In this document: one piece after another, positions 3,923-19,885 of the stretch
Layout of the letters: the number at the start of each line of letters is the position of its first letter
How positions within the stretch are numbered: position 1 is the stretch's first letter
Origin: Vitrella brassicaformis CCMP3155
Lineage: Eukaryota; Protista; Chromerida
Assembly: GCA_001179505.1 (NCBI GenBank)
Contig: CDMY01000714.1
Span: 1-28,100 of the forward strand
Reading direction: 5' to 3'
DNA: 28,100 nt
Program-made: the position numbers and the translations under genes
Notes under the pieces: model-generated
Seen by the model: the letters and a program-made list of their open reading frames with translations, nothing else
What the model was told of the DNA's origin: nothing
The model's database searches: none

Positions 3923-6337
3923 TCACTCTAGCGACTTGCTGAAGCCTCGCACCCACGACCGAAAGGAGGGCAGCAGACCGTGACCTTGGTCCACCATCAA
4001 ACACGCAGAAATGCCATCACCACGGAGGGGGTGCGCAAATGGCATTTGTTTGTATGGAATCTTACCGAGTGATGAGACGGAGAAGTATTGTGATTTGGGA
4101 ATGAGGAAGAGGGTGGCCAGCCACGAGAGGGAGGCGATCTGGACGAGCCACACCCCGTTACTCATGATCTTGTGGCGCAGGTAGGGCGCGAAGATGGACG
4201 TCACGATAAACAACAGCGGAAAGGCCAAAAAGTACAGGCTTGAAGCAATAGTGTACGTACGCAAAAAGCTGCACAACACGGTAAAGCAAGGAAACGGATG
4301 GGCTCAACGCTTGGGCGTTTGGCCTCTTCTTTTGTCTGGTTACGCCTGTAGACGCGATGCAGGTGAGGCAAGGTATGTGTTCGAGCAGGCGACGAGGAAG
4401 ATCGCGTAGAGAGCTATCCGAATGCACACTATTGTCCAGCCTATCGCGCCCTCGTTCTGATGTGGTGGCGCAATCAACAGACAACACACAATGCCTCCGT
4501 CCGTTGGGATCCCTCCATCCTCCCCATGTGTATACGCACGCTGTGAAATTTGAAGCGCGAGTCGTCGGCCATGTGGTTCCCGATCGCCACGAGCACAAGA
4601 TGACCCACACAAACCTGAGGGATGGCACAAGGAGACAGAGTACACTTTCTGGAGTCTCTGGGAGACAGTTCCCTTGACCCCTGTGACCGTGGCGACGACT
4701 GGCAGGGCTGGAGCAGAGCCAACCCGTACCTGATGCATTCATGAGGCCAGACATGCACACACGTAAGGCGCACAGGAATCCATCTCACCTTAGCGAGATC
4801 CCCTGAACAAAAGACACACATCAAACATGACATTTCAAAGCATCGCTGACGCCTGCCGCAATCTTAAGTGACCTGTCCTGAGAGTGTATCCGAGAGCTAT
4901 CAACAGGAGAATGGTCGTAACTAGCATCTGCAATTGGAGCACCGATGTCACGAGACCATGACGAAATGGGCGCTTCCCCTGCTGCCTTCCTTACAATTAC
5001 CTGGCTGAGCATTGACAGGACCTCAGAAAGGACGTCACATAATGTCAGGCCTGTCCCATTGTGTGCATAAAAGAACAGATGAGTCATGTTGAGGAGGGAA
5101 CCGGCCTGTTTGACACATAGATACACAAAGCCGCTCTCTGTATTGCACACTGCCCCATCGGCCTCTCGTCTCCACCCACATACTCACAGCCGAGGAAAGG
5201 ATCGCCACGTTGAGCACTGTCGGCGAAGGCATTCACGAATCGACACAAGACACGCGTCCATGAACCCAGTACCTGTGACTGCCTATCGTGTACCCTGGAT
5301 GATGGGATGCAGTGGCTGGGTGCGCATGAGCTCCAATTCCCTCTTCAGGAACACCAGCATCATCACAATGTAGCTCAGTGCCTGCATGGCTGCGGCGAAG
5401 CGAGTCCCCAGCAGCTCATATGAGAATTGGGACCCGTCTTCCTGCAGCATGACCGACTCAAACATGACGGGGAAGGGCCCACTCGTGGGCCCGAGCAGCT
5501 CTTGGCAGTCGCTGAAGGCGAAGTACCACACGTGGGGCCGAATCGACTGGTGGAGGACACCTAAGACGGCACGCAAGTGTGGGAACAACCACTTGTATCC
5601 ACAAATGCTCTGTCCTGCCGTCCATTTCATAGCGCTACCTGTGACCCTGTGCATGCGTCGGCGCCATCGATCGGCAAGCACATGAGGAGTAATATCCAAA
5701 GCAATAAGTCGCGCGCGTAGCTGTATGCACCTGATGCGGGCTTCTCCTAGGACTTACCAGGGCGACCACTCATTGTCCTTTTGCACGATGACCTGCCGAG
5801 TGGTCATGACCTTCTTGCTCCGCTCGCAGGCAGGCAGACGGTCTACCTCGATCCAATGGTTGTCTGCAGGAGGAGCAAGGCACCATAGTCACGTCACCAC
5901 CTGTCCGTCTGTGGGGCCCACCGAGGAATATGAGCAGCGGAAGGGTGACGTTCTTCTCCAGCGCAGGCGAGTTTGTGTGCGTGCCGAGCCTGTCAACCGA
6001 ATACACCGAAGCTCCCCTCCTGAAGCAGGTTGCATGTTCTGCTCTGCCCACTTGATTCGGTACTTGAAGCTTCCATTGCCGATCTTAAATGCGAACTGAA
6101 TGCAAGAGAAGAAGTAATTCCATGAAAGAGTGTTCCCGAGGCGGGGCCTTCCCCTGCTCGATCAGACCTTGGAGAGATACACGAACCTCTTATCGGGGGC
6201 CATCCACCTGTGAAAAGACAGCGCACATATTGCTTCATCTGGAGTGGTTTCACATACCTCGTGTCCTTGACCACCTTCCCCTCCGCGAATCCGCTGAGCA
6301 GAAAGCTCGTGAAGACAACAAAGCGCCAAACCTGCAT
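3923..6337 (-). CDS. GPR180/TMEM145-like rhodopsin-type 7TM protein with signal peptide and extracellular N-terminal domain, multi-exon
   Basis: Signal peptide MQVWRFVVFTSFLLSGFAEG, then FVYLSKFAFKIG, RPHVWYFAFSDC, EDGSQFSYELLG, HPIIQ, HLFFYAHNGTG, FAPYLRHKIM and PKSQYFSVSSLG, which are characteristic motifs of this family. GT-AG introns; stop codon at 3923. Confidence 0.85.
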
Positions 6338-6526
6338 GTCTGCATCGAAAGTCAGCTCTTCAGGTCTTCCATCAACCGGGGGAAGCGGAAGGGCTCCCCT
6401 GTTCAAGCTCGCAATCGTCGGGTTAGGGCAAAGATGTAAGATCTGCCATTCAGACGCTCGCACCTTAGCTGCGCAGGCCTCAATGTGTCGACCGGAAGAA
6501 AGAAGGATGAGTGCGCTTCGCCAGCC

Positions 6527-6535
6527 AAACCCTAA
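6527..6535 (+). promoter_or_regulatory. AAACCCTAA telo-box-like motif in the divergent promoter, ending 32 bp upstream of the GH81 ATG
   Basis: Exact AAACCCTAA at 6527-6535. Function is inferred by analogy to plant telo-boxes only. Confidence 0.3.
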
Positions 6536-6566
6536 CTCTTAACGCATCTTTGCAAAGTGCCGGATA

Positions 6567-9500
6567 ATGTGCAAAAGCGCAGACGATGAGGGAACGTATG
6601 AGGGATGCCCCTTTCGCAGGAGCCTTCTCCTTGCTGCCGTGTGTGGATTACCTTTCCTTTTAGTCGTCCTCACTTTCCGGGGGTCTTCAGTTCCAGACGG
6701 TCCCGGAGATGGCACAGGCTATCCGAGGGCAGATCGTGTGTATGGAGAACTGTACCGCCGGTTTGTGACCCCGACGACTGAGAATCTGCCTCACACCGTT
6801 ACTGCAGCGCGGGGCTCTGGTGGAAATGGAGACGTCATCAAGCTCGATGGTACGTGCGGACAGACTCCGTTCTCCCAGCTCTTATCAAATTTTGCTCCAC
6901 CAGGCATTGGGGGCTTCCATTCGTCTCTTTGGCACCCACGCTACTCCCACACTCGCGTCTATCAGATCAATTTTGCCCCTAGCGCACTAGGCAGACGGCT
7001 CACGGCAGGCGGATGCGCCAACGCTCCGGTCCGGTGCTACATGAAGCTCGCGGTCTTCCCGACGGGGACGGCATCGACCGTGTCTGCCTTCAGCAATGGC
7101 ACGGCGAGGGAGTTGCTCCTACGCCGAGATCAAGACAGCGAGAACACGATCAACGATGAGTTCAAGGGTCGTGTTAGTGGTCAGCCATTGAGGATAGAAG
7201 TGCCCACCCCCGCTGTCAATTTGCCGACCAACATGTGGTGGAGCAATCTGGTGCACGGACAAGGAAAAGGCGAGGGCAATGGCGTCAACGTATCGCCATA
7301 CCTGGTCTCGGTGGTGGCCGAGCCTGGCCGCATTGGAGCCAACGTCCATATGCCCTTCACATTCATCAAAACCGACCCCAAGACGCCTGGAGTGCATTCG
7401 TACATTGACAGCTTTTATCCGCGGGCGTCGGCTTGGTTCGTTGGCTTTGAGGTGGCGCCGCTGAAGGAAATGACGGGCAGCGGGGGAGATTCTAAGCGCT
7501 TCGCGCGGCCTGAGGTGTCACATTTTGTGAGCGACTTTGACGATCTCTCTGTGACGAAGGTGATCAGCTACAAACGTGAGTCGAGAGGGGACAGCAGACC
7601 GGTAAAAAAGAAAAAAAGCAGCTCCCGAAGCAACACTTTGCCCCCTTGTGTGCTTCGTATTGCAGCACGTCACCAAGTTATACCTGGTTCGCGGCTCGCC
7701 GCTTGTGACCCTGGAGCTCCCTGAGCAGCCGCTGATGCTGGCTCCCCTTGACTGGGACAGAGAGCTCAAATTCCCTAACTACATCACCAGGTGACTGACC
7801 ATGGGAGGCGTATGATCAGATGTTGGGATTCCTGCTCTTTGCCGACGTGCATAATGTAGGTTCACCGTACTTCCTGCGTCGAGCGAGGCAATGCAGTCAG
7901 CGAAGGCTAACGCTTCAACTACTTATGACTGTCCGGACGAGGAAGTCGGACGGCAGAACAAATCGGTACGCACGTTTGTGCGAGTCCTGCAGTACACTAG
8001 GAGTCTTTGTGACGGTCTCTTGCTTGCTGTGTCCTTGTTTCAGCTCCCATCGGACACGTTTGTACTTCAGCTCTTGGACGGTTCCGAGTGGGTGCTAATT
8101 GTCTCGGAACCTTTGGCCCTGCGCTGCCTCACAAAGCGCGATAAGGCCGGCATTATCCAGAAGAACTGGATTGAATCCGCAGAGCCATTGCCGGAGGTAG
8201 TGAGCCAGATTCCGCCTGTGCAGTGCTTCTTTTGACTTTCTTGGTTGCACAGGGCACCATAGTGCGTCTCGGCGTCGGCAACGTGTGCAACATGACGGCC
8301 GTTACTTCGGATACCCCCACTCTGCTCGAGCACACGAAGCGGCTTTGCGACCATCAGTACGCATCGACCACGTAAGTGGCGCGCATCACATGAGTCCGTC
8401 CAAGGTGCCGATGGATGCATGGCCCCTGTTGCGTCTATCAGATCCGCATTGCTATCGCATTCGCACCGCTACTATCCAGTGTCTGCCAGTGTTGATATCG
8501 GCCTTCAACCTGTCAGCAACGCGTCGTCAAACCCAAAGGGGCCCTCGCATGCTCGTCAGTGATGAATGTAACGTGCAAACGACCTGCCCTCTGCTTCGGA
8601 CCAAATGGCGTCGCTTTGTGCTGCCTGGCTGTCCTTCAGGCATCTCGTATAGGTTCTGTGTCCGTCGCATGCAGCGGGCCATGATGCAAGAACATCAGTC
8701 ATACAACGAAAAGATGACGGTCTTTGTGAACGGGCTCCACCAGTGAGCACAAAGAACGACAAAGCTGCAGCGGCTCACAGTGGAATCTTCGTCTTCACGC
8801 AGGAAGCTCCTGCCACAAGAGATGCCGCGTGCCTTCGAAGGACCATCTGCCTGCCTCGAGACAGCTCACGGTTGGCCAGAAGAACAAAAGGCCAGAAAGC
8901 TGGAACTCTGCCCATTGTCTCATGTCCAGGCCCCCTGTGCATGACGAACATTGACGTGTCCCCGAGCCGCTCAAGTGATGGCATCTGCACCTACGAGGCC
9001 GTGTTGCGGCTCGCTCCCATTTCTCTATCATCGGCGTCTTTTCACGAGAGCCCGGAGGTGCCTGATGACTGGCAGCAACTGCTTGCTGACCAGATCTGGT
9101 CTGGTAGGAGCTGACTTCCTTCACTCTTTTGTCGTCATCTTGCGATGTCGTGATCAGACCTGAATGGATCAGAGTTTCGGCTACCGGCCGCCCTGCGTCG
9201 AGGCGACTATGATGCCTACCGATTCGGCCGGATTCTCCACAAGTATGCGCACACGGCACTCGTGGCTCATCGCATCAAGGCTCCACTTCTGCGCGACGAG
9301 GCGCTGCATCGCATCCGCGGCCCTTTAGAGAAGTGGCTGAGCTTCACATCCGGCAACCGGCTTGTGACTGACGATTTGTGGGGTGGGGTGGTGCCGTGTG
9401 GATGTGATGCGGACACAAAAGGCAACCCGTGCCATTACCGCTTCAACAAGAGGGATGGTGTTGTGGCAAGTGAGTCGTGTGTGTCGCTCTATGAACCAGA

Positions 9501-10643
9501 GAGGGATGCGGGCAGCGGACTCTATGCCAACCATCTTGCCATGTACGTACAGAGGAGGGACATCGTGATCCATCTTTCGTGCGCCTGCCTTCCCGCAGAT
9601 ACGGCTACCTGGTATATGTTGCCGCAGTGCTGACCTACTTTGACAGAAGCTGGCCAAAGAAACGTATCGGGCATCCGTCGATGCGGGGGGATATGCGTTT
9701 CCACGATGTGAGACGTCTTGCAAAAATCGAGCACTCCAAACGCTCAAAAGAGCGTTCTTCCCTCTCTCGTTCGTTTAGGCTGTGATGCTCTTGATTCGCG
9801 ACGTGGCGGACGTCGGGCAGCTGATCGGCGACCGTCCTTCCAGGTGACCATGAGAAAATGGCCAGAGACACACGGTATCTCAATCCATTCGCAATTCCGC
9901 AGGAATCTCACCCGTTACAAGGACTGGTGGTGGCTCAATTCTTGGAACAGCGGAATTGGGGAAGATCCTGAGGGACCCTCAGCAACGCACACAACAGAGA
10001 TTGTCTTTTCTTACTATGCGATTTCGCTTTACGCGGAGGTCACGAAGAAGAAGGGCATGTATCTCTGGGCTCGTTTCCTTTCGATGACCGAGATGCTCTT
10101 TGCCCGGACATTCATGCATCTGCACGCCCCGTCCTCATCTCCCTCATCTTCACCCGTTTTTCCCTCGCCAGTGCGCATCTATCCAGAGAAGATGACCAAC
10201 TCGTTGCCCTTTATCGGCCGCTTTGCAGAAATGGCTGTCCGTCTGGAAGAGCAGCCATCGCATCTCTATCCCTTGAGCCCCGTCGCCCTTGAACTCTTCG
10301 GCTATGTCGCTGACAGGATTGAGAGAAAGTGTGACGGCTGCGCTGGCTTTCAGCAGGGATGGGGTGTGGGGACGGTGGCAGGCCAATTGCTGTTGAAACG
10401 AACCCGCAGCGGAGAGGCGAGAAGGCTTCTGAAGACGGAGATGAGGGACACCTGCTTTGACGAGGTCAGCGAAAAGCAATCGTCAATACCGCTGCCGATC
10501 CGTCGTGACTGAGACTTTTTTCATGGTTTGTGCAGGGCTTGAGTGGTTGCGAGGCCTATCTTCCAGGTCTCCTGGCGTGGTGGGCAGCTGCCCTTGCTGG
10601 ACGACACAATCATCAAACAAAAGCCGTAGACACATTCCGCTGA
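6567..10643 (+). CDS. Glycoside hydrolase family 81 (endo-beta-1,3-glucanase)-like protein with an N-terminal membrane anchor and substituted catalytic residues
   Basis: Motifs in order: LPTNMWWSNL, LYLVRGSPLVT, LLDGSEW, AYRFGRILHKYA, LVTDDLWGGVV, DAGSGLYANHLAIYGYLVYVAAVL, LLIRDVA, RYKDWWWLNSWNSG, EGPSATHTTEIVFSYYA, HLYPLSPVALELF and LLAWWAA. All exons could be joined in frame with GT-AG introns. A hydrophobic segment lies at residues about 19-37. Confidence 0.88.
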
Positions 10644-10756
10644 ATGGTCGGGGTCTTGGTACATCATATCACTAATTGATAGTACTCACAACACGTATTC
10701 ACTGGACTAAAGGATAGAGTGGATGTCATACACGCACATTTCACGTTCAACGTAGG

Positions 10757-11230
10757 TCAAATAAACTCATCGGCCTCCCTCCGTCTGGCCAACTCCACCT
10801 GGAGCTCCTGCAGCTTCGACTGGCCCGACTTCCCCGCAACGAACATAGCACGCTGAGCGTCTGGCTCTGAATGACGCTCGAGGTCACTACCTTAGTGGGG
10901 GAGGGCTGTCAATGAGAGGTCCATCAACTCAATTTCTTACCCTTCAGAGCCGCCTGAATGAGATGCCAACACACAAGCAAATGAATCGATTGTCGCTCTT
11001 TTTCAACTCTTCAGCTTCTGCACTCGGGGGAGGTGGACAAATCTCACCACATGGAAAGTGCATGGTTCATGGCACCTCCTGGTCCACCTCTCCGAGGCCC
11101 ACAGGGAGCTTTTCGACCGGTTTGTTAGTCTCTGGCAACATGCGTCGCAATATTCAGCGACGAGTGCGTGACACTGGGGGACGTATTCAGTGCTGACACA
11201 CATACGTTTTGTATCTGACTTGGAGTACCC
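10757..11230 (-). other. Four putative in-frame short exons (11230-11206, 11131-11076, 10953-10941, 10866-10757), absent from the ORF track
   Basis: GT-AG introns of 74, 122 and 74 nt join GYSKSDTKQTNKPVEKLPVGLGEVDQEAALKEPDAQRAMFVAGKSGQSKLQELQVELARRREADEFI* in frame. Confidence 0.45.
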
Positions 11231-11368
11231 CTACGAATGGTCATATTTAATGACGGAATACTCATACGTCTGGTCAGGAAAGTGGGTGGCTTTCACGATA
11301 ATGCCAATCATACGCGCAGAGAGGGACTAGATATCGAAATCACGCAACAAATCTGGATCTGTGCCAAG

Positions 11369-16658
<5,290 letters not shown>

Positions 16659-17305: not shown

Positions 17306-19885
17306 TCAGCTGCACGACCACGAGGCCACAAGATTGGATCTCCTCATTTCCTTCCCCCTTGCACCAAGGGCAACTGCCTGATAGTAGTGGCACCGCTGCT
17401 TGTCCTCCTCTGGCAGGTCCACCCAGTGCTCAAACTGCTTCTTCTTGACTGTCGCCAGCACCTCAGTCAGCGGCTCGTCATACCTCTCAGACGTCACTAC
17501 TCGCCACCTTTTTACTTCCGTCGCGCCATTCCACGAGAAGTGGAGCCGAAGGGTATTAGTGGGGTTCTGGTTGTCGAGAAGCGCTGCTGGGTCCAGGGAT
17601 CCCGATCCAGCGACCCTTCACCGTGCGATAGGAACCTGATGTCTCGAATGCCCACTCCATCCTAGATGCCTGTGTCATATGAACTCGCCAAGCGCGCCTC
17701 GGTTGGCTTTCCATCGGAATCGAAGAAGAGGTCATACTCGACACCTCGAGCGGACGCTGGTGTGGAGCCCACTGCGTTGTCAAAGAGGCTTATTCGATTT
17801 GCGCCCGCTTGTTTGCCCAGGTCTCTCACGTCGTGCTGCTGGCGAAACTGCCCGTTCGTGTCATTGACAATCCTGAGAGTAAAGTTGTCACAGTTGAATT
17901 CCAACGTTAGGTTCTCTCGTCAGCTCCCCATCCATCCATGCTAAAGGGTACCTAAAATTGCCGCCCCTGCCGCCGAGACGCCACAAGACCTCGCCAGTGT
18001 CCCTGCACGACACCGGATGCAAGTCCGTCTTTGCTTGCAAAACGTCAGTAGTCGCTCACCTATTTATCTTTATGATTTGTGACATCGTCCTCATCCTGAG
18101 GGTGAAAACCAGAAACCATTCTGCTCAGAAACTTGAAGCCGAGGGAGAAAACGTGGTGCTCACGATAGGAGAATGTTGCCGTCGTGGGCTTCCTCCAGAC
18201 TATTCGCATGAAAAACGTCCCAGATACCGTTGATGACAGTGATATGACTCTCCCAAAAGCTGAGGGGGAGATGATCCCAGCTGCGCCACTCGAAGGCCAC
18301 GTCACCTGCAGACGTCGAATGCAGGGACCCTCTTGTGCTTGCCGTTGTCATCTGTGCACACAGCTCATACCGTCAGCAGTGATCTCCTGAATGACCACAC
18401 CCACAACGCCCTTAGTCCACTTCACATCGGGACGCAATTTCTGGCCCTGCAGGAGCTGAAAATCGTAACTTACAGATAAGTAGGATCCCAAAACCAGACA
18501 GACGTCAAGACGAATACCAGATCGTGCATACGCTCTTAAATGGCTTTCCTTACATGAAGATAAGCCCATTGCCGTTCTTCATCAGCTGAAACCTGATGAA
18601 CAACCGAATGAAGTGCACTGATCGAGGAGCAACTTTCTTCCTTCGAGATCCTTCTCGCTCACTCGTGCCCTTCCTGGTGCTCTCCATGCTTCCCACTAAA
18701 CTCATGTCGCACTTCGTAGTCAGGCCCAAGCACCTGGGCGCGGTGTTGAAGATGCCACCACAAGAGTTGGCCTCGGTGTGTCGGTGCAAAACTTGAAACG
18801 TCGACTTCTCTCTCGCGGAAGTACACCGGATCGCCCGTCGAAGTCATCTGCAGGATATGGGTATTGTTTTATTTTCGTCGCAACCCACTCGGCGAGAATC
18901 GTCTTACGATGATATTGTATCGAGGCCAGACGTTGCTTCCACTAGGTCCGGCTGTAAAGAGGTAGCCAGTGGACAACGCAGACAGGTTCCCTCGAACACT
19001 CACGCTGGCACGGGGATAGCTGAGAGGGAGGGTCCTGAATGCATTCAAATGTGGGCACGAATCGACCTGAAGGAATCCCTCATCTTGCCTGTATGCACAG
19101 TTGGGAGCATAGAACTGGCTTTCATCCTGTCTGGGCATTTCATCACGACAATCGATGTCGTCGAGATCGTCCACATCGGCTGCCTGTGTTCCTTGCTGAT
19201 CAATAGCGGGAATGCCCAACAGCCAATCGATGTCTTCAGCCTTCCTGAACAGCTCCAGCGTCTCGTGCGAAGAATACTCTTTCAAGGTGACATTTTGTCG
19301 CAATTTTGCCCTCGCCTCTACGGAAATGTACTTGTTCATTGTGTGAGACGAAATAGAAAAGTTCCACGAAGAAGAAGAAAGCGAATTCCCCTCGATGGTC
19401 CTGATTCCTCTCGCAACTGAAATGCTAACTGTCTCCCCAGGCTCGAAAGGCGCCTCGGGTACGAAATAGACGGTTCGGTTGTCACTCAGCAACCGTGTCT
19501 CTCCCTTGTGGTCGCCAGACTCATCACCGCGGACACGGATCTTCCCTTCAACGCTTTTTCTGTTGACCTTGTCTTCTGGTCGAAAGGCGATTGTTGTGAA
19601 GGGGGAAACGAGGATGGAATGTGGCAAGGGATGGGCGTATACAAACGGGGTTTCCAACAATGCTTCGAGCCCGGGGCTTGGCTTGGGAGCTCTTTCCATT
19701 TCACCCACGTCTCTGAGTCTCGGCTGTCCTCGACCGAGGTCGACACCCATCCATTTCAGCTGACCGAGAACCTGCTCAGTATTCCGTCGCGGCACTCCAT
19801 CGTAAGTGATTGCCCCTTTTTGTGAGCTGCCATGACGCCCAAAAGCCAAAAGAACGCATAGGACAGCAAGAATATTGGCCCGCAT
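17306..19885 (-). pseudogene. Secreted aryl-sulfate sulfotransferase (ASST)-like gene with an N-terminal bacterial-type Ig-like domain; introns present; last exon has a deletion with a stop and a frameshift
   Basis: Signal peptide MRANILAVLCVLLAFG. Ig-like segment HPLPHSILVSPFTTIAF..GDESGDHKG..LSDNRTVYFVPEAPFEPGETVSISV. ASST motifs GHEFQL, VIQE, FEWRSWDH, DVFHANSLE, GNILLSMR, WRLGG, FRQQHDVR, ISLFDN, RGVEY, SYRTVKGRWIG and FSWNGATEV. TAG at 17662-17664 with a frame change to MEWAF, and a second frame change near 17594. Confidence 0.75.

What the first reader, a model, noticed from the sequence alone, without database searches (positions are those of the whole stretch)
9511..9999. Intact, membrane-anchored GH81 with two of three conserved acidic active-site residues replaced: candidate non-catalytic beta-glucan receptor
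Seen: the spliced protein aligns without gaps to two GH81 active-site motifs. DFGNGYYNDHHFHYGY becomes DAGSGLYANHLAIYGY (Asp to Asn, codon 9529-9531). DGxNQESSSEA becomes EGPSATHTTEI (first Glu to Thr, codon 9985-9987; second Glu kept at 9997-9999). The gene reads open over about 4 kb and many exons, keeps the structural motifs and aromatic residues (KDWWWLNSW), and has an N-terminal hydrophobic anchor. Established (from memory): in characterised GH81 enzymes the NDH Asp and the two QESxSE Glu residues form the catalytic centre, and legume beta-glucan elicitor-binding proteins belong to GH81. Inference: this is a pseudo-enzyme retained as a beta-1,3-glucan lectin or sensor. It could bind fungal or oomycete walls, or laminarin-type storage glucan, in an alga-like protist.
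Basis: partly seen in the sequence, partly recalled or inferred. Interest (0 to 1): 0.85.

Follow-up and report, generated by a model that had tools for sequence, protein, structure and literature searches.

The report
Membrane-anchored GH81 pseudo-glucanase in Vitrella
An expressed 15-exon gene of the alga Vitrella brassicaformis encodes a membrane-tethered protein with the whole fold of a beta-1,3-glucan-cutting enzyme but without two of the four acidic residues such enzymes need, so it most likely no longer cuts glucan; whether it still binds glucan is untested.

Summary
The window is a whole 28.1 kb contig of Vitrella brassicaformis CCMP3155. RNA contigs from four runs (three studies) support a 15-exon gene (CDS 6567-10643, 1056 aa).

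- **Topology:** one N-terminal hydrophobic segment is followed by a poorly modelled stalk.
- **Fold:** the body is a full three-domain GH81 fold (AlphaFold pTM 0.83; TM 0.76 to RmLam81A).
- **Catalytic residues:** a profile built only from 112 canonical GH81 proteins aligns both motifs without gaps. All 112 keep Asp, Glu and Glu at these positions. Here they read Asn772 (9529-9531), Thr862 (9985-9987) and Glu866 (9997-9999).
- **Published support:** yeast Eng2 needs four acids, and two of them are gone here. First-Glu-to-Ala kills barley GBP1.
- **Not a dying gene:** a second Vitrella paralogue (36% identical, sister clade, six shared intron positions, expressed) also lacks the Asp.

"Pseudo-enzyme" is well supported. 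"Beta-glucan receptor" is not. About ten polar residues of the centre are replaced and differ between the paralogues, and the cytosolic tail is only 18 residues. A clade-specific Asp855 in the catalytic loop leaves a re-wired enzyme possible. The scan had already flagged the paralogue elsewhere in this genome. I rate this a new variant of a known kind, of moderate interest.

The parts
6463..10954 (+). Transcribed span seen in RNA contigs (5' UTR from at least 6463; 3' UTR to at least 10952-10954, where it overlaps the convergent neighbour)
6567..10643 (+). Coding sequence, 1056 aa. The 15 exons are 6567-6849, 6904-7601, 7666-7790, 7860-7965, 8044-8196, 8253-8371, 8442-8554, 8640-8742, 8803-8870, 8930-9103, 9158-9542, 9599-9707, 9779-9843, 9903-10464 and 10536-10643
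   Evidence: Joints in RNA contigs of 4 runs. All 14 introns are GT..AG, and the translation is open to the stop at 10641-10643. It matches the JGI transcript protein P0010 from residue 103 on
6621..6677 (+). Residues 19-37, the single strongly hydrophobic segment (probable signal anchor). It is preceded by an 18-residue tail ending in RR
   Evidence: Kyte-Doolittle 19-residue mean 2.49, the only window above 1.6. The paralogue has the same feature at residues 53-71 (2.41)
6850..6903 (+). First intron, 54 nt and in frame. It keeps the anchor in frame with the GH81 body
   Evidence: runs X1, X6, X7. The JGI contig L001 instead skips 6827-6921 with non-canonical ends, which breaks the frame
9505..9608 (+). 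Motif block 1 (DAGSGLYANHLAIYGY), residues 764-779, interrupted by intron 9543-9598
9529..9531 (+). Asn772 (AAC) at the invariant Asp of NDHH (RmLam81A D475 by memory; ScEng2 D518 by spacing)
   Evidence: 112/112 canonical proteins have Asp
9543..9598 (+).
   Evidence: all four runs, GT..AG
9913..10020 (+). Motif block 2 (RYKDWWWLNSWNSGIGEDPEGPSATHTTEIVFSYY), residues 838-873
9922..9924 (+). Asp841, retained (column of ScEng2 D588 by its spacing of 21 residues from the first Glu)
9964..9966 (+). Asp855, an acidic residue shared only by the two Vitrella paralogues. Canonical GH81 has Phe here in 87 of 112. It is the candidate replacement acid if the site is re-wired
9985..9987 (+). Thr862 (ACG) at the invariant first Glu of QESxSE
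   Evidence: The same residue is Ala in the 6fop 'E515A' structure and is E500 in barley GBP1
9997..9999 (+). Glu866 (GAG), the second Glu of QESxSE, retained

Best explanation
The gene encodes a type II-like membrane protein with four parts:
- an 18-residue cytosolic tail;
- one transmembrane signal anchor (residues 19-37);
- a poorly structured stalk of about 150 residues;
- a complete three-domain GH81 body facing the lumen or outside.

The GH81 scaffold is kept: the glycines, the aromatic residues, Arg838, Asp841 and Glu866. The protein has lost the Asp of NDHH (now Asn772), the first Glu of QESxSE (now Thr862) and most neighbouring polar residues. It therefore most likely cannot hydrolyse beta-1,3-glucan by the family's inverting mechanism.

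It is one of two old Vitrella paralogues that share this state. The loss is therefore ancient and the proteins have been kept for a non-hydrolytic role.

The most likely role (inferred, not shown) is binding or organising the alga's own wall or sporangium beta-1,3-glucan at a membrane. That would mean tethering, templating or shielding the polymer rather than acting as a signalling receptor.

**Shown:** gene structure, expression, fold prediction, residue equivalences, the paralogue and its age.
**Inferred:** loss of activity (from published mutants of other GH81 enzymes), membrane topology, any ligand.
For: - **Gene and expression:** 14 GT-AG introns and zero mismatches in RNA contigs of 4 runs from 3 studies. 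The ORF is 1056 aa.
- **Family and fold:** Pfam GH81 C-domain E 1.4e-21; canonical-only HMM E 3.8e-50 covering both the N and C domains. The AlphaFold model has pTM 0.83, with pLDDT 85-97 in the blocks of ten residues that hold both motifs. The top 15 Foldseek PDB hits are RmLam81A, BhGH81 and CtLam81A, with TM up to 0.77 over the whole target.
- **Residues:** the columns are D/E/E in 112 of 112 canonical proteins and N772/T862/E866 here. The alignment there is ungapped.
- **Necessity of those residues:** ScEng2 D518, D588, E609 and E613 (PMC3627985). GBP1 E500A abolishes laminarin hydrolysis. 6fop 'E515A' carries Ala at the first Glu.
- **Long retention:** paralogue P0002 (CEL99133.1) has Ser/Asp/Glu at the three columns and is 36% identical. 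It is sister to this protein with SH-aLRT 100. The two share the derived states H->L, H->N, N->F and T->P at nearly invariant columns. Six intron positions are shared with the same phase. dN is 0.73 against dS of about 2. The paralogue is present spliced in an RNA-run assembly.
- **Secretory-type features:** both paralogues have one N-terminal hydrophobic segment and 13 Cys conserved between them.
Against: - No binding or activity data exist.
- So many polar residues of the centre changed, and so differently in the two paralogues, that sugar binding at the old catalytic subsites may be lost too.
- Both paralogues share a new acidic residue (Asp855/Asp796) seven residues before the lost Glu. 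The paralogue also keeps a carboxylate (Asp803) at the first-Glu column, so some catalysis could survive.
- dS is saturated, so dN/dS of about 0.37 is only a rough bound.
- Topology rests on a hydropathy scale only.
- I could not read model coordinates, so no distances in the active site were measured.
- The assignment of acid and base among the GH81 acids comes partly from memory. The structure papers are not in the held library.
Confidence: 0.6

Rival explanations
1. It is still an enzyme with a re-wired centre. Glu866 and Asp841 would work with a new acid (Asp855, or Glu854/Glu857 or His863 in the same loop). The activity could be hydrolysis or transglycosylation of beta-1,3-glucan, or action on a different glycan.
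For: - Two of the four essential acids are kept.
- Asp855/Asp796 is acidic in both paralogues where 87 of 112 canonical proteins have Phe.
- The paralogue has Asp at the first-Glu column.
- The scaffold and many aromatic residues are conserved.
- Long retention under constraint fits an enzyme as well as a binder.
Against: - Asp and the first Glu are invariant in 112 of 112 canonical proteins.
- Single mutations of them inactivate three different GH81 enzymes.
- The neighbouring residues that position the substrate and the base (H, H, Q, S, N) are also gone and are not conserved between the paralogues. That is not what a newly optimised active site looks like.
Confidence: 0.2
2. The GH81 fold has been recruited for something that no longer involves carbohydrate in the old cleft. 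It could be a structural wall or membrane protein, or a protein-binding scaffold.
For: - About ten polar cleft residues are replaced, mostly by small or hydrophobic ones and differently in the two paralogues.
- Branches are long: stem 0.91 and tips 0.73-0.92, against a median of 0.39.
- There are clade-specific Cys pairs and insertions.
- The last third of the barrel aligns poorly to the canonical profile.
Against: - Aromatic and glycine positions lining the cleft are kept: Y770, Y777, Y779, Y782, W848, Y872 and W722.
- The genome reportedly has beta-1,3-glucan synthesis genes (earlier scan note s1-226943, untested).
- GH81 relatives in the sister lineage Coccidia occur in species with beta-1,3-glucan in their oocyst walls (PMC3518913).
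Confidence: 0.15
3. It is a decaying pseudogene, or an assembly or annotation artefact.
For: - Essential residues are lost.
- One JGI transcript contig (L001) carries a frame-breaking 95-nt skip in exon 1.
Against: - The ORF is open across 15 exons.
- All introns are spliced at GT-AG in four runs from three studies, identical to the genome.
- An ancient expressed paralogue has the same architecture.
- dN is well below dS.
- The 95-nt skip has non-canonical ends, and three other runs contradict it by showing a 54-nt in-frame GT-AG intron.
Confidence: 0.03

Closest known systems
Canonical GH81 endo-beta-1,3-glucanases (Rhizomucor miehei RmLam81A 4K35/5XBZ, Bacillus halodurans BhGH81 5T49, Clostridium thermocellum CtLam81A 6FOP, yeast Eng1/Eng2)
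   Same: - Same family by sequence profile and predicted fold over all three domains.
- The scaffold residues of both signature motifs are kept, as are Arg838, Asp841 and Glu866.
   Different: - Asn for the invariant Asp and Thr for the invariant first Glu; about eight further nearly invariant polar residues are replaced.
- N-terminal membrane anchor and stalk.
- 13 clade-specific conserved Cys.
- The Pfam N-domain model is not matched by this protein.
Plant GH81 beta-glucan-binding proteins (soybean GBP; barley GBP1)
   Same: GH81 proteins discussed as glucan binders or perception components at the cell surface.
   Different: Barley GBP1 keeps the catalytic centre and is an active endoglucanase; only the engineered E500A form is inactive. 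The Vitrella protein carries that kind of change naturally, plus the Asp loss, and is membrane-anchored.
Coccidian GH81 'glucan hydrolase' (TgGH81/EtGH81; Bushkin et al. 2012, PMC3518913)
   Same: - Closest lineage to chromerids (established phylogeny, from memory).
- Many-exon genes with a 'relatively divergent' GH81 domain.
- Found in organisms that make wall beta-1,3-glucan with a plant-like glucan synthase.
   Different: Orthology and the state of the four acids in TgGH81 could not be tested here because no tool could fetch those sequences. An N-terminal phmmer search of 1.84 billion representatives found only the Vitrella paralogue.
Non-catalytic glycosidase-fold glycan binders (GH18 chitinase-like lectins; insect GH16-like beta-glucan recognition proteins). 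Recalled from general knowledge, not tested here
   Same: Same logic: the enzyme fold is kept, the catalytic acid is replaced, and the protein is retained under selection.
   Different: - Different folds and families.
- In those cases the sugar-contacting residues are largely kept and binding is demonstrated. Here many cleft residues changed and binding is unknown.
Vitrella paralogue CEL99133.1 (P0002, contig CDMY01000275)
   Same: - Same architecture: N-terminal anchor and full GH81 body.
- Sister in the tree.
- Lacks the Asp (Ser698) and keeps the second Glu (Glu807).
- Shares Asp796, the counterpart of Asp855.
- Expressed.
   Different: - 36% identity and 20 introns against 14.
- Asp803 at the first-Glu column, with both flanking Ser kept, so it is less degenerate in motif 2.
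- It matches the Pfam N-domain model.

Membership tests
Glycoside hydrolase family 81 (sequence/fold family) | Significant match to the GH81 C-terminal (alpha/alpha)6-barrel domain profile | tested here: met
   PF17652 scores 77.7 bits against a cut-off of 25.6, E 1.4e-21. The canonical-only HMM gives E 3.8e-50.
Glycoside hydrolase family 81 (sequence/fold family) | GH81 N-terminal beta-sandwich domain | tested here: met
   Pfam PF03639 is not matched by this protein. However, the canonical HMM aligns positions 60-93 and 125-421, paralogue P0002 passes PF03639 (30.7 bits against 25.6), and the model aligns over the whole length of RmLam81A (TM by target 0.76).
Glycoside hydrolase family 81 (sequence/fold family) | Three-domain GH81 fold | tested here: met
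   The AlphaFold model has pTM 0.83. Foldseek's top 15 PDB hits are all GH81, E 1e-19 to 1e-25. This is a prediction, not an experimental structure.
Active GH81 endo-beta-1,3-glucanase (EC 3.2.1.39) | The four acidic residues necessary for activity (ScEng2 D518, D588, E609, E613) | tested here: not met
   N772, D841, T862 and E866: two of the four are replaced. The column of D588 was assigned by its spacing of 21 residues from E609.
Active GH81 endo-beta-1,3-glucanase (EC 3.2.1.39) | Hydrolysis of laminarin or curdlan | not testable with these tools
   Needs recombinant protein. The UniRef name 'glucan endo-1,3-beta-D-glucosidase' is an automatic name.
Pseudo-enzyme retained for a non-catalytic role | Intact, expressed gene | tested here: met
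Pseudo-enzyme retained for a non-catalytic role | Long-term retention under constraint after loss of the catalytic residues | tested here: met
   The sister paralogue is 36% identical and shares derived substitutions and six intron positions. dN is 0.73 against dS of about 2, which is saturated. No orthologues from other species were available for a proper dN/dS.
Beta-1,3-glucan lectin or receptor | Conservation of sugar-contacting residues, or measured binding | tested here: inconclusive
   Aromatic and glycine scaffold residues are kept, but about ten nearly invariant polar residues are replaced. Residue-level contacts from the crystal complexes could not be checked, and there are no binding data.
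Beta-1,3-glucan lectin or receptor | A signalling or effector part on the cytosolic side | tested here: not met
   Only 18 residues precede the anchor, and no Pfam domain lies outside GH81.
Plant GBP-type GH81 glucan-binding protein | Intact catalytic centre together with glucan binding | tested here: not met
   The catalytic centre is not intact here, whereas barley GBP1 is active.

The most novel reading that the evidence does not exclude
The two Vitrella proteins may be the free-living representatives of a chromerid-apicomplexan lineage of membrane-anchored, non-hydrolytic GH81 proteins that organise wall beta-1,3-glucan. On this reading the 'divergent GH81 glucan hydrolase' predicted in Toxoplasma and Eimeria, whose oocyst walls contain beta-1,3-glucan, would be their counterpart and would also be a glucan organiser rather than a hydrolase.
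Probability: 0.15. Interest if true: 0.6.

Novelty: new variant of a known kind. Interest (0 to 1): 0.42.

Why it matters
GH81 is treated as a single-activity family (endo-beta-1,3-glucanase only), and databases name these two Vitrella proteins as that enzyme.

A naturally occurring, anciently retained GH81 without two essential acids would be, as far as the searched literature goes, the first candidate pseudo-enzyme of this family. No paper in the library holds both 'Vitrella' and 'GH81', and the 'GH81' plus pseudo-enzyme search found no natural case.

Three things follow if it holds:
- It warns against reading GH81 counts as glucanase capacity in alveolate genomes.
- It offers a natural, non-cutting GH81 cleft as a possible beta-1,3-glucan probe.
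- It gives a tractable free-living model for the poorly understood GH81 gene of coccidian parasites with beta-1,3-glucan in their oocyst walls.

The general idea, a glycosidase fold turned binder, is well known, so the surprise is moderate.

Tried and rejected
- **phmmer of the public protein against PDB sequences** found no GH81 chain. The link had to be made through a canonical bridge (P0007), a custom HMM and the fold.
- **Word-indexed homologue searches** with the protein and with the two-paralogue alignment returned almost nothing beyond Vitrella, Bigelowiella and Closterium.
- **The exhaustive phmmer search** with the N-terminal 343 residues found only the paralogue below 1e-10.
- **A metagenome/metatranscriptome scan** with clade-specific peptide patterns found no relative. 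No orthologue outside Vitrella was obtained, so no proper dN/dS was possible.
- **Paralogue dN/dS** was computed, but dS of about 2 is saturated and YN00 failed.
- **The JGI transcript's 95-nt skip (6827-6921)** was considered as a real intron that would detach the anchor. I rejected it because its ends are non-canonical and three other runs show a 54-nt in-frame GT-AG intron.
- **My first hand-made splice guesses** for the exon 1/2 junction (donors at 7560 or 7576) were wrong; RNA shows 7601|7666.
- **The original GH81 structure papers** (PubMed 24100321 and 28781080) and PMC4334804 are not held. The acid/base assignment in RmLam81A and BhGH81 therefore rests on memory.
- **Searches for Vitrella wall glucan or Vitrella GH81 papers** found nothing relevant.
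- **Neighbouring ORFs** gave no glucan-related Pfam hit.
- **Model coordinates are not returned by the tool**, so no active-site distances could be measured.
- **Toxoplasma, Eimeria and Chromera GH81 sequences** could not be fetched with the remaining tools.
- **Read laying** was given 5000 letters.
Full report
**Origin and gene model**

The window is a complete 28,100-base contig of Vitrella brassicaformis CCMP3155, a photosynthetic relative of Apicomplexa. The public protein CEM31131.1 (P0001, 924 aa) maps to it at 100% identity, and its longest contig is 28,100 bases.

I laid Logan contigs of four runs from three studies on 6301-11300 (5000 letters, within the operators' limit). They show fourteen + strand joints, all GT..AG, and no differing letters. 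Splicing the window at these joints gives an open frame from ATG 6567 to the stop at 10641-10643. The model has 15 exons, introns of 54-85 nt, and encodes 1056 aa.

The intron is 9543-9598, is seen in all four runs, and splits the Ile776 codon.
- A JGI transcript contig (L001, protein P0010) agrees with the model from residue 103 to the C-terminus.
- The public model is wrong at both ends. It starts at an internal Met and uses a false last exon. The transcripts instead end in a GLLAWWAAALAG helix that matches the usual GH81 C-terminus.
- L001 skips 95 nt (6827-6921) inside exon 1, which would break the frame. That skip has non-canonical ends. Three other runs contradict it by showing a 54-nt in-frame GT-AG intron at 6850-6903. 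The ATG at 6567 and the hydrophobic segment are therefore in frame with the body.

**The observation**

The spliced protein reads DAGSGLYANHLAIYGY (residues 764-779) and RYKDWWWLNSWNSGIGEDPEGPSATHTTEIVFSYY (838-873).

I collected 112 canonical GH81 proteins of at least 560 aa and aligned them with the two Vitrella proteins. Independently, I built an HMM from the canonical rows only and aligned it to the Vitrella proteins. Both methods give the same ungapped register:

| Canonical residue | This protein | Codon |
|---|---|---|
| Asp of NDHH | Asn772 | 9529-9531 |
| First Glu of QESxSE | Thr862 | 9985-9987 |
| Second Glu of QESxSE | Glu866 (retained) | 9997-9999 |

All 112 canonical proteins carry D, E and E at these columns. 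RNA contigs show the same letters, so neither sequencing error nor editing explains the changes.

**Family and fold**

- Pfam's GH81 C-domain is matched well above its cut-off (77.7 bits against 25.6).
- Pfam's N-domain model is not matched by this protein. It is matched by its paralogue, and the canonical HMM aligns the N-domain here too.
- An AlphaFold model of P0010, built with an 89-sequence alignment, has pTM 0.83. The blocks of ten residues that contain the two motifs have pLDDT 85-97. About 85 residues after the anchor are disordered, with pLDDT below 50.
- Foldseek's first 15 PDB hits are all GH81 structures: RmLam81A with TM by target 0.73-0.77, then BhGH81 and CtLam81A.
- AlphaFold DB clusters likewise return only GH81-type proteins.

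**Are the replaced residues really essential?**

- A review of Aspergillus glucanases reports that site-directed mutagenesis of yeast Eng2 identified four necessary acids: D518, D588, E609 and E613 (PMC3627985).
- By spacing, these correspond to the NDHH Asp, the Asp of R-x-x-D (21 residues before the first Glu), and the two Glu. Here they are N772, D841, T862 and E866.
- Barley GBP1 loses laminarin hydrolysis when its first Glu is changed to Ala (E500A; bioRxiv 10.1101/2023.04.12.536646).
- The PDB entry 6fop, titled 'CtLam81A mutant E515A', has Ala exactly at the first Glu of QASSSE.
- From memory only, since the papers are not held: the RmLam81A study names D475, E553 and E557 as the catalytic centre, with E553 as proton donor and E557 as base.
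- Under any published pairing, at least one member of the acid/base pair is missing here.

**How far the centre is remodelled**

Of the 38 columns that are at least 98% invariant in canonical GH81:
- both Vitrella paralogues keep 20;
- both have changed 11;
- one or the other has changed 7.

The retained positions are mostly glycines, aromatic residues, Arg838, Asp841, Glu866 and Glu897. The positions lost in one or both paralogues are mostly polar residues of the two motifs (N, D, H, H, H, Q, E, S, S, N). Seven of the eleven shared losses carry different residues in the two paralogues. That pattern looks like relaxed constraint on the former -1/+1 site.

It strengthens loss of catalysis. It weakens the assumption that the old cleft still grips glucan the same way.

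One caveat remains. Both paralogues share an acidic residue (Asp855 here, Asp796 in the paralogue) seven residues before the lost Glu, at a column where 87 of 112 canonical proteins have Phe. This is the concrete candidate if the site has been re-wired.

**Not a dying gene**

The paralogue P0002 (CEL99133.1) lies on another contig and is the only other strong hit among 1.84 billion representatives.

- It is 36% identical over the full length and shares 13 conserved Cys.
- It forms a clade with this protein (SH-aLRT 100) on a long stem.
- It shares four derived substitutions at nearly invariant columns.
- It shares six intron positions with identical phase.
- It appears spliced in an assembly of run ERR558152, on a contig that holds its uninterrupted coding sequence.
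- It has Ser698, Asp803 and Glu807 at the three columns.
- dN is 0.73 against a saturated dS of about 2.

The loss of the Asp is therefore most simply placed before an old duplication, and both copies have been kept since.

The scan's first stage had already flagged a gene elsewhere in this genome with the same title idea (s1-205718). Its 4777 letters equal the span of P0002's gene, 6001-10777 in L002. That match is an inference.

**Topology**

Residues 19-37 are the only strongly hydrophobic stretch (Kyte-Doolittle mean 2.49). They are preceded by 18 residues ending in RR. The paralogue has an equivalent stretch at 53-71. That position is too far from the N-terminus for a usual cleaved signal peptide, which favours a signal anchor.

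The inferred order is a short tail, an anchor, a disordered stalk and a globular domain. This is the layout of type II membrane proteins, including many Golgi-resident glycan enzymes (general knowledge). The compartment is therefore open: plasma membrane, Golgi or another organelle.

**Context**

- Bushkin et al. [quoted passage not shown] They noted a plant-like glucan synthase and a roughly 30-exon, 'relatively divergent' GH81 gene in both.
- Chromerids are the closest free-living relatives of these parasites.
- Earlier unchecked notes of this scan mention a GT48 glucan synthase and GH16 and GH17 proteins with lost catalytic residues in this genome.
- This makes an endogenous wall-glucan partner plausible, but I could not fetch the coccidian sequences to test orthology or the state of their acids.
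- Neighbouring genes in the window show nothing glucan-related. The downstream neighbour is a convergent DEAH/HA2 helicase whose 3' part overlaps this gene's 3' UTR.

**Verdict**

- The gene encodes an intact, expressed, probably membrane-anchored GH81-fold protein that lacks two of the four essential acids. It very likely is not a canonical endo-beta-1,3-glucanase. I estimate about 0.75 for loss of canonical activity and 0.6 for the whole best explanation.
- Glucan binding is plausible but unproven (about 0.4). A signalling receptor role is unlikely. A re-wired enzyme remains possible (about 0.2).
- It is a new variant of a known kind (a glycosidase fold turned non-enzyme), apparently not described for GH81 in the searched literature.
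- Interest is moderate.

Noticed in passing
window 6567-7040 and 10465-10643: The public gene model CEM31131.1 (P0001) is wrong at both ends. It starts at an internal Met (about 7041), so it lacks the anchor and 158 residues. It also uses a false last exon. RNA contigs and the JGI transcript give a 1056-aa protein ending in ...LLAWWAAALAGRHNHQTKAVDTFR.
   Followed up: yes
window 6827-6921 (L001 284/285): One JGI transcript contig skips 95 nt with non-canonical ends next to a short inverted repeat (GAGACG/CGTCTC), which breaks the frame. Three other runs show a 54-nt GT-AG intron at 6850-6903 instead. It is probably an assembly or template-switch artefact, possibly a rare aberrant isoform.
   Followed up: partly
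window 10953-11046 (- strand) and 11811-13077 (-): A CT..AC joint in all four runs is an intron of the minus strand. It lies about 310 nt beyond the GH81 stop, apparently in the 3' part of the convergent DEAH/HA2-type helicase gene. RNA contigs of 7.7-7.8 kb run through both genes, so the two 3' ends overlap.
   Followed up: partly
window 6301-6467: RNA contig depth is three- to ten-fold higher here than over the GH81 gene (for example 284 against 178 in X7, and 30 against 2-5 in X1). This suggests a separate, more highly expressed transcript ends just upstream. An ORF at 5993-6463 (-) has no Pfam match.
   Followed up: no
window 18869-19885 (-): A 338-aa ORF has a weak match to the bacterial Ig-like domain Big_5 (25.1 bits against a cut-off of 23.6). 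It may be part of another secreted or adhesive protein gene.
   Followed up: no
L002 6001-10777 (contig CDMY01000275): The paralogue gene has 20 introns against 14 here. Only six positions are shared, so many introns were gained or lost since the duplication.
   Followed up: partly
window 6483-6541: The 5' UTR holds upstream ATGs (about 6483 and 6506) before the in-frame stop at 6540-6542. One opens a short upstream ORF of about 11 codons.
   Followed up: no
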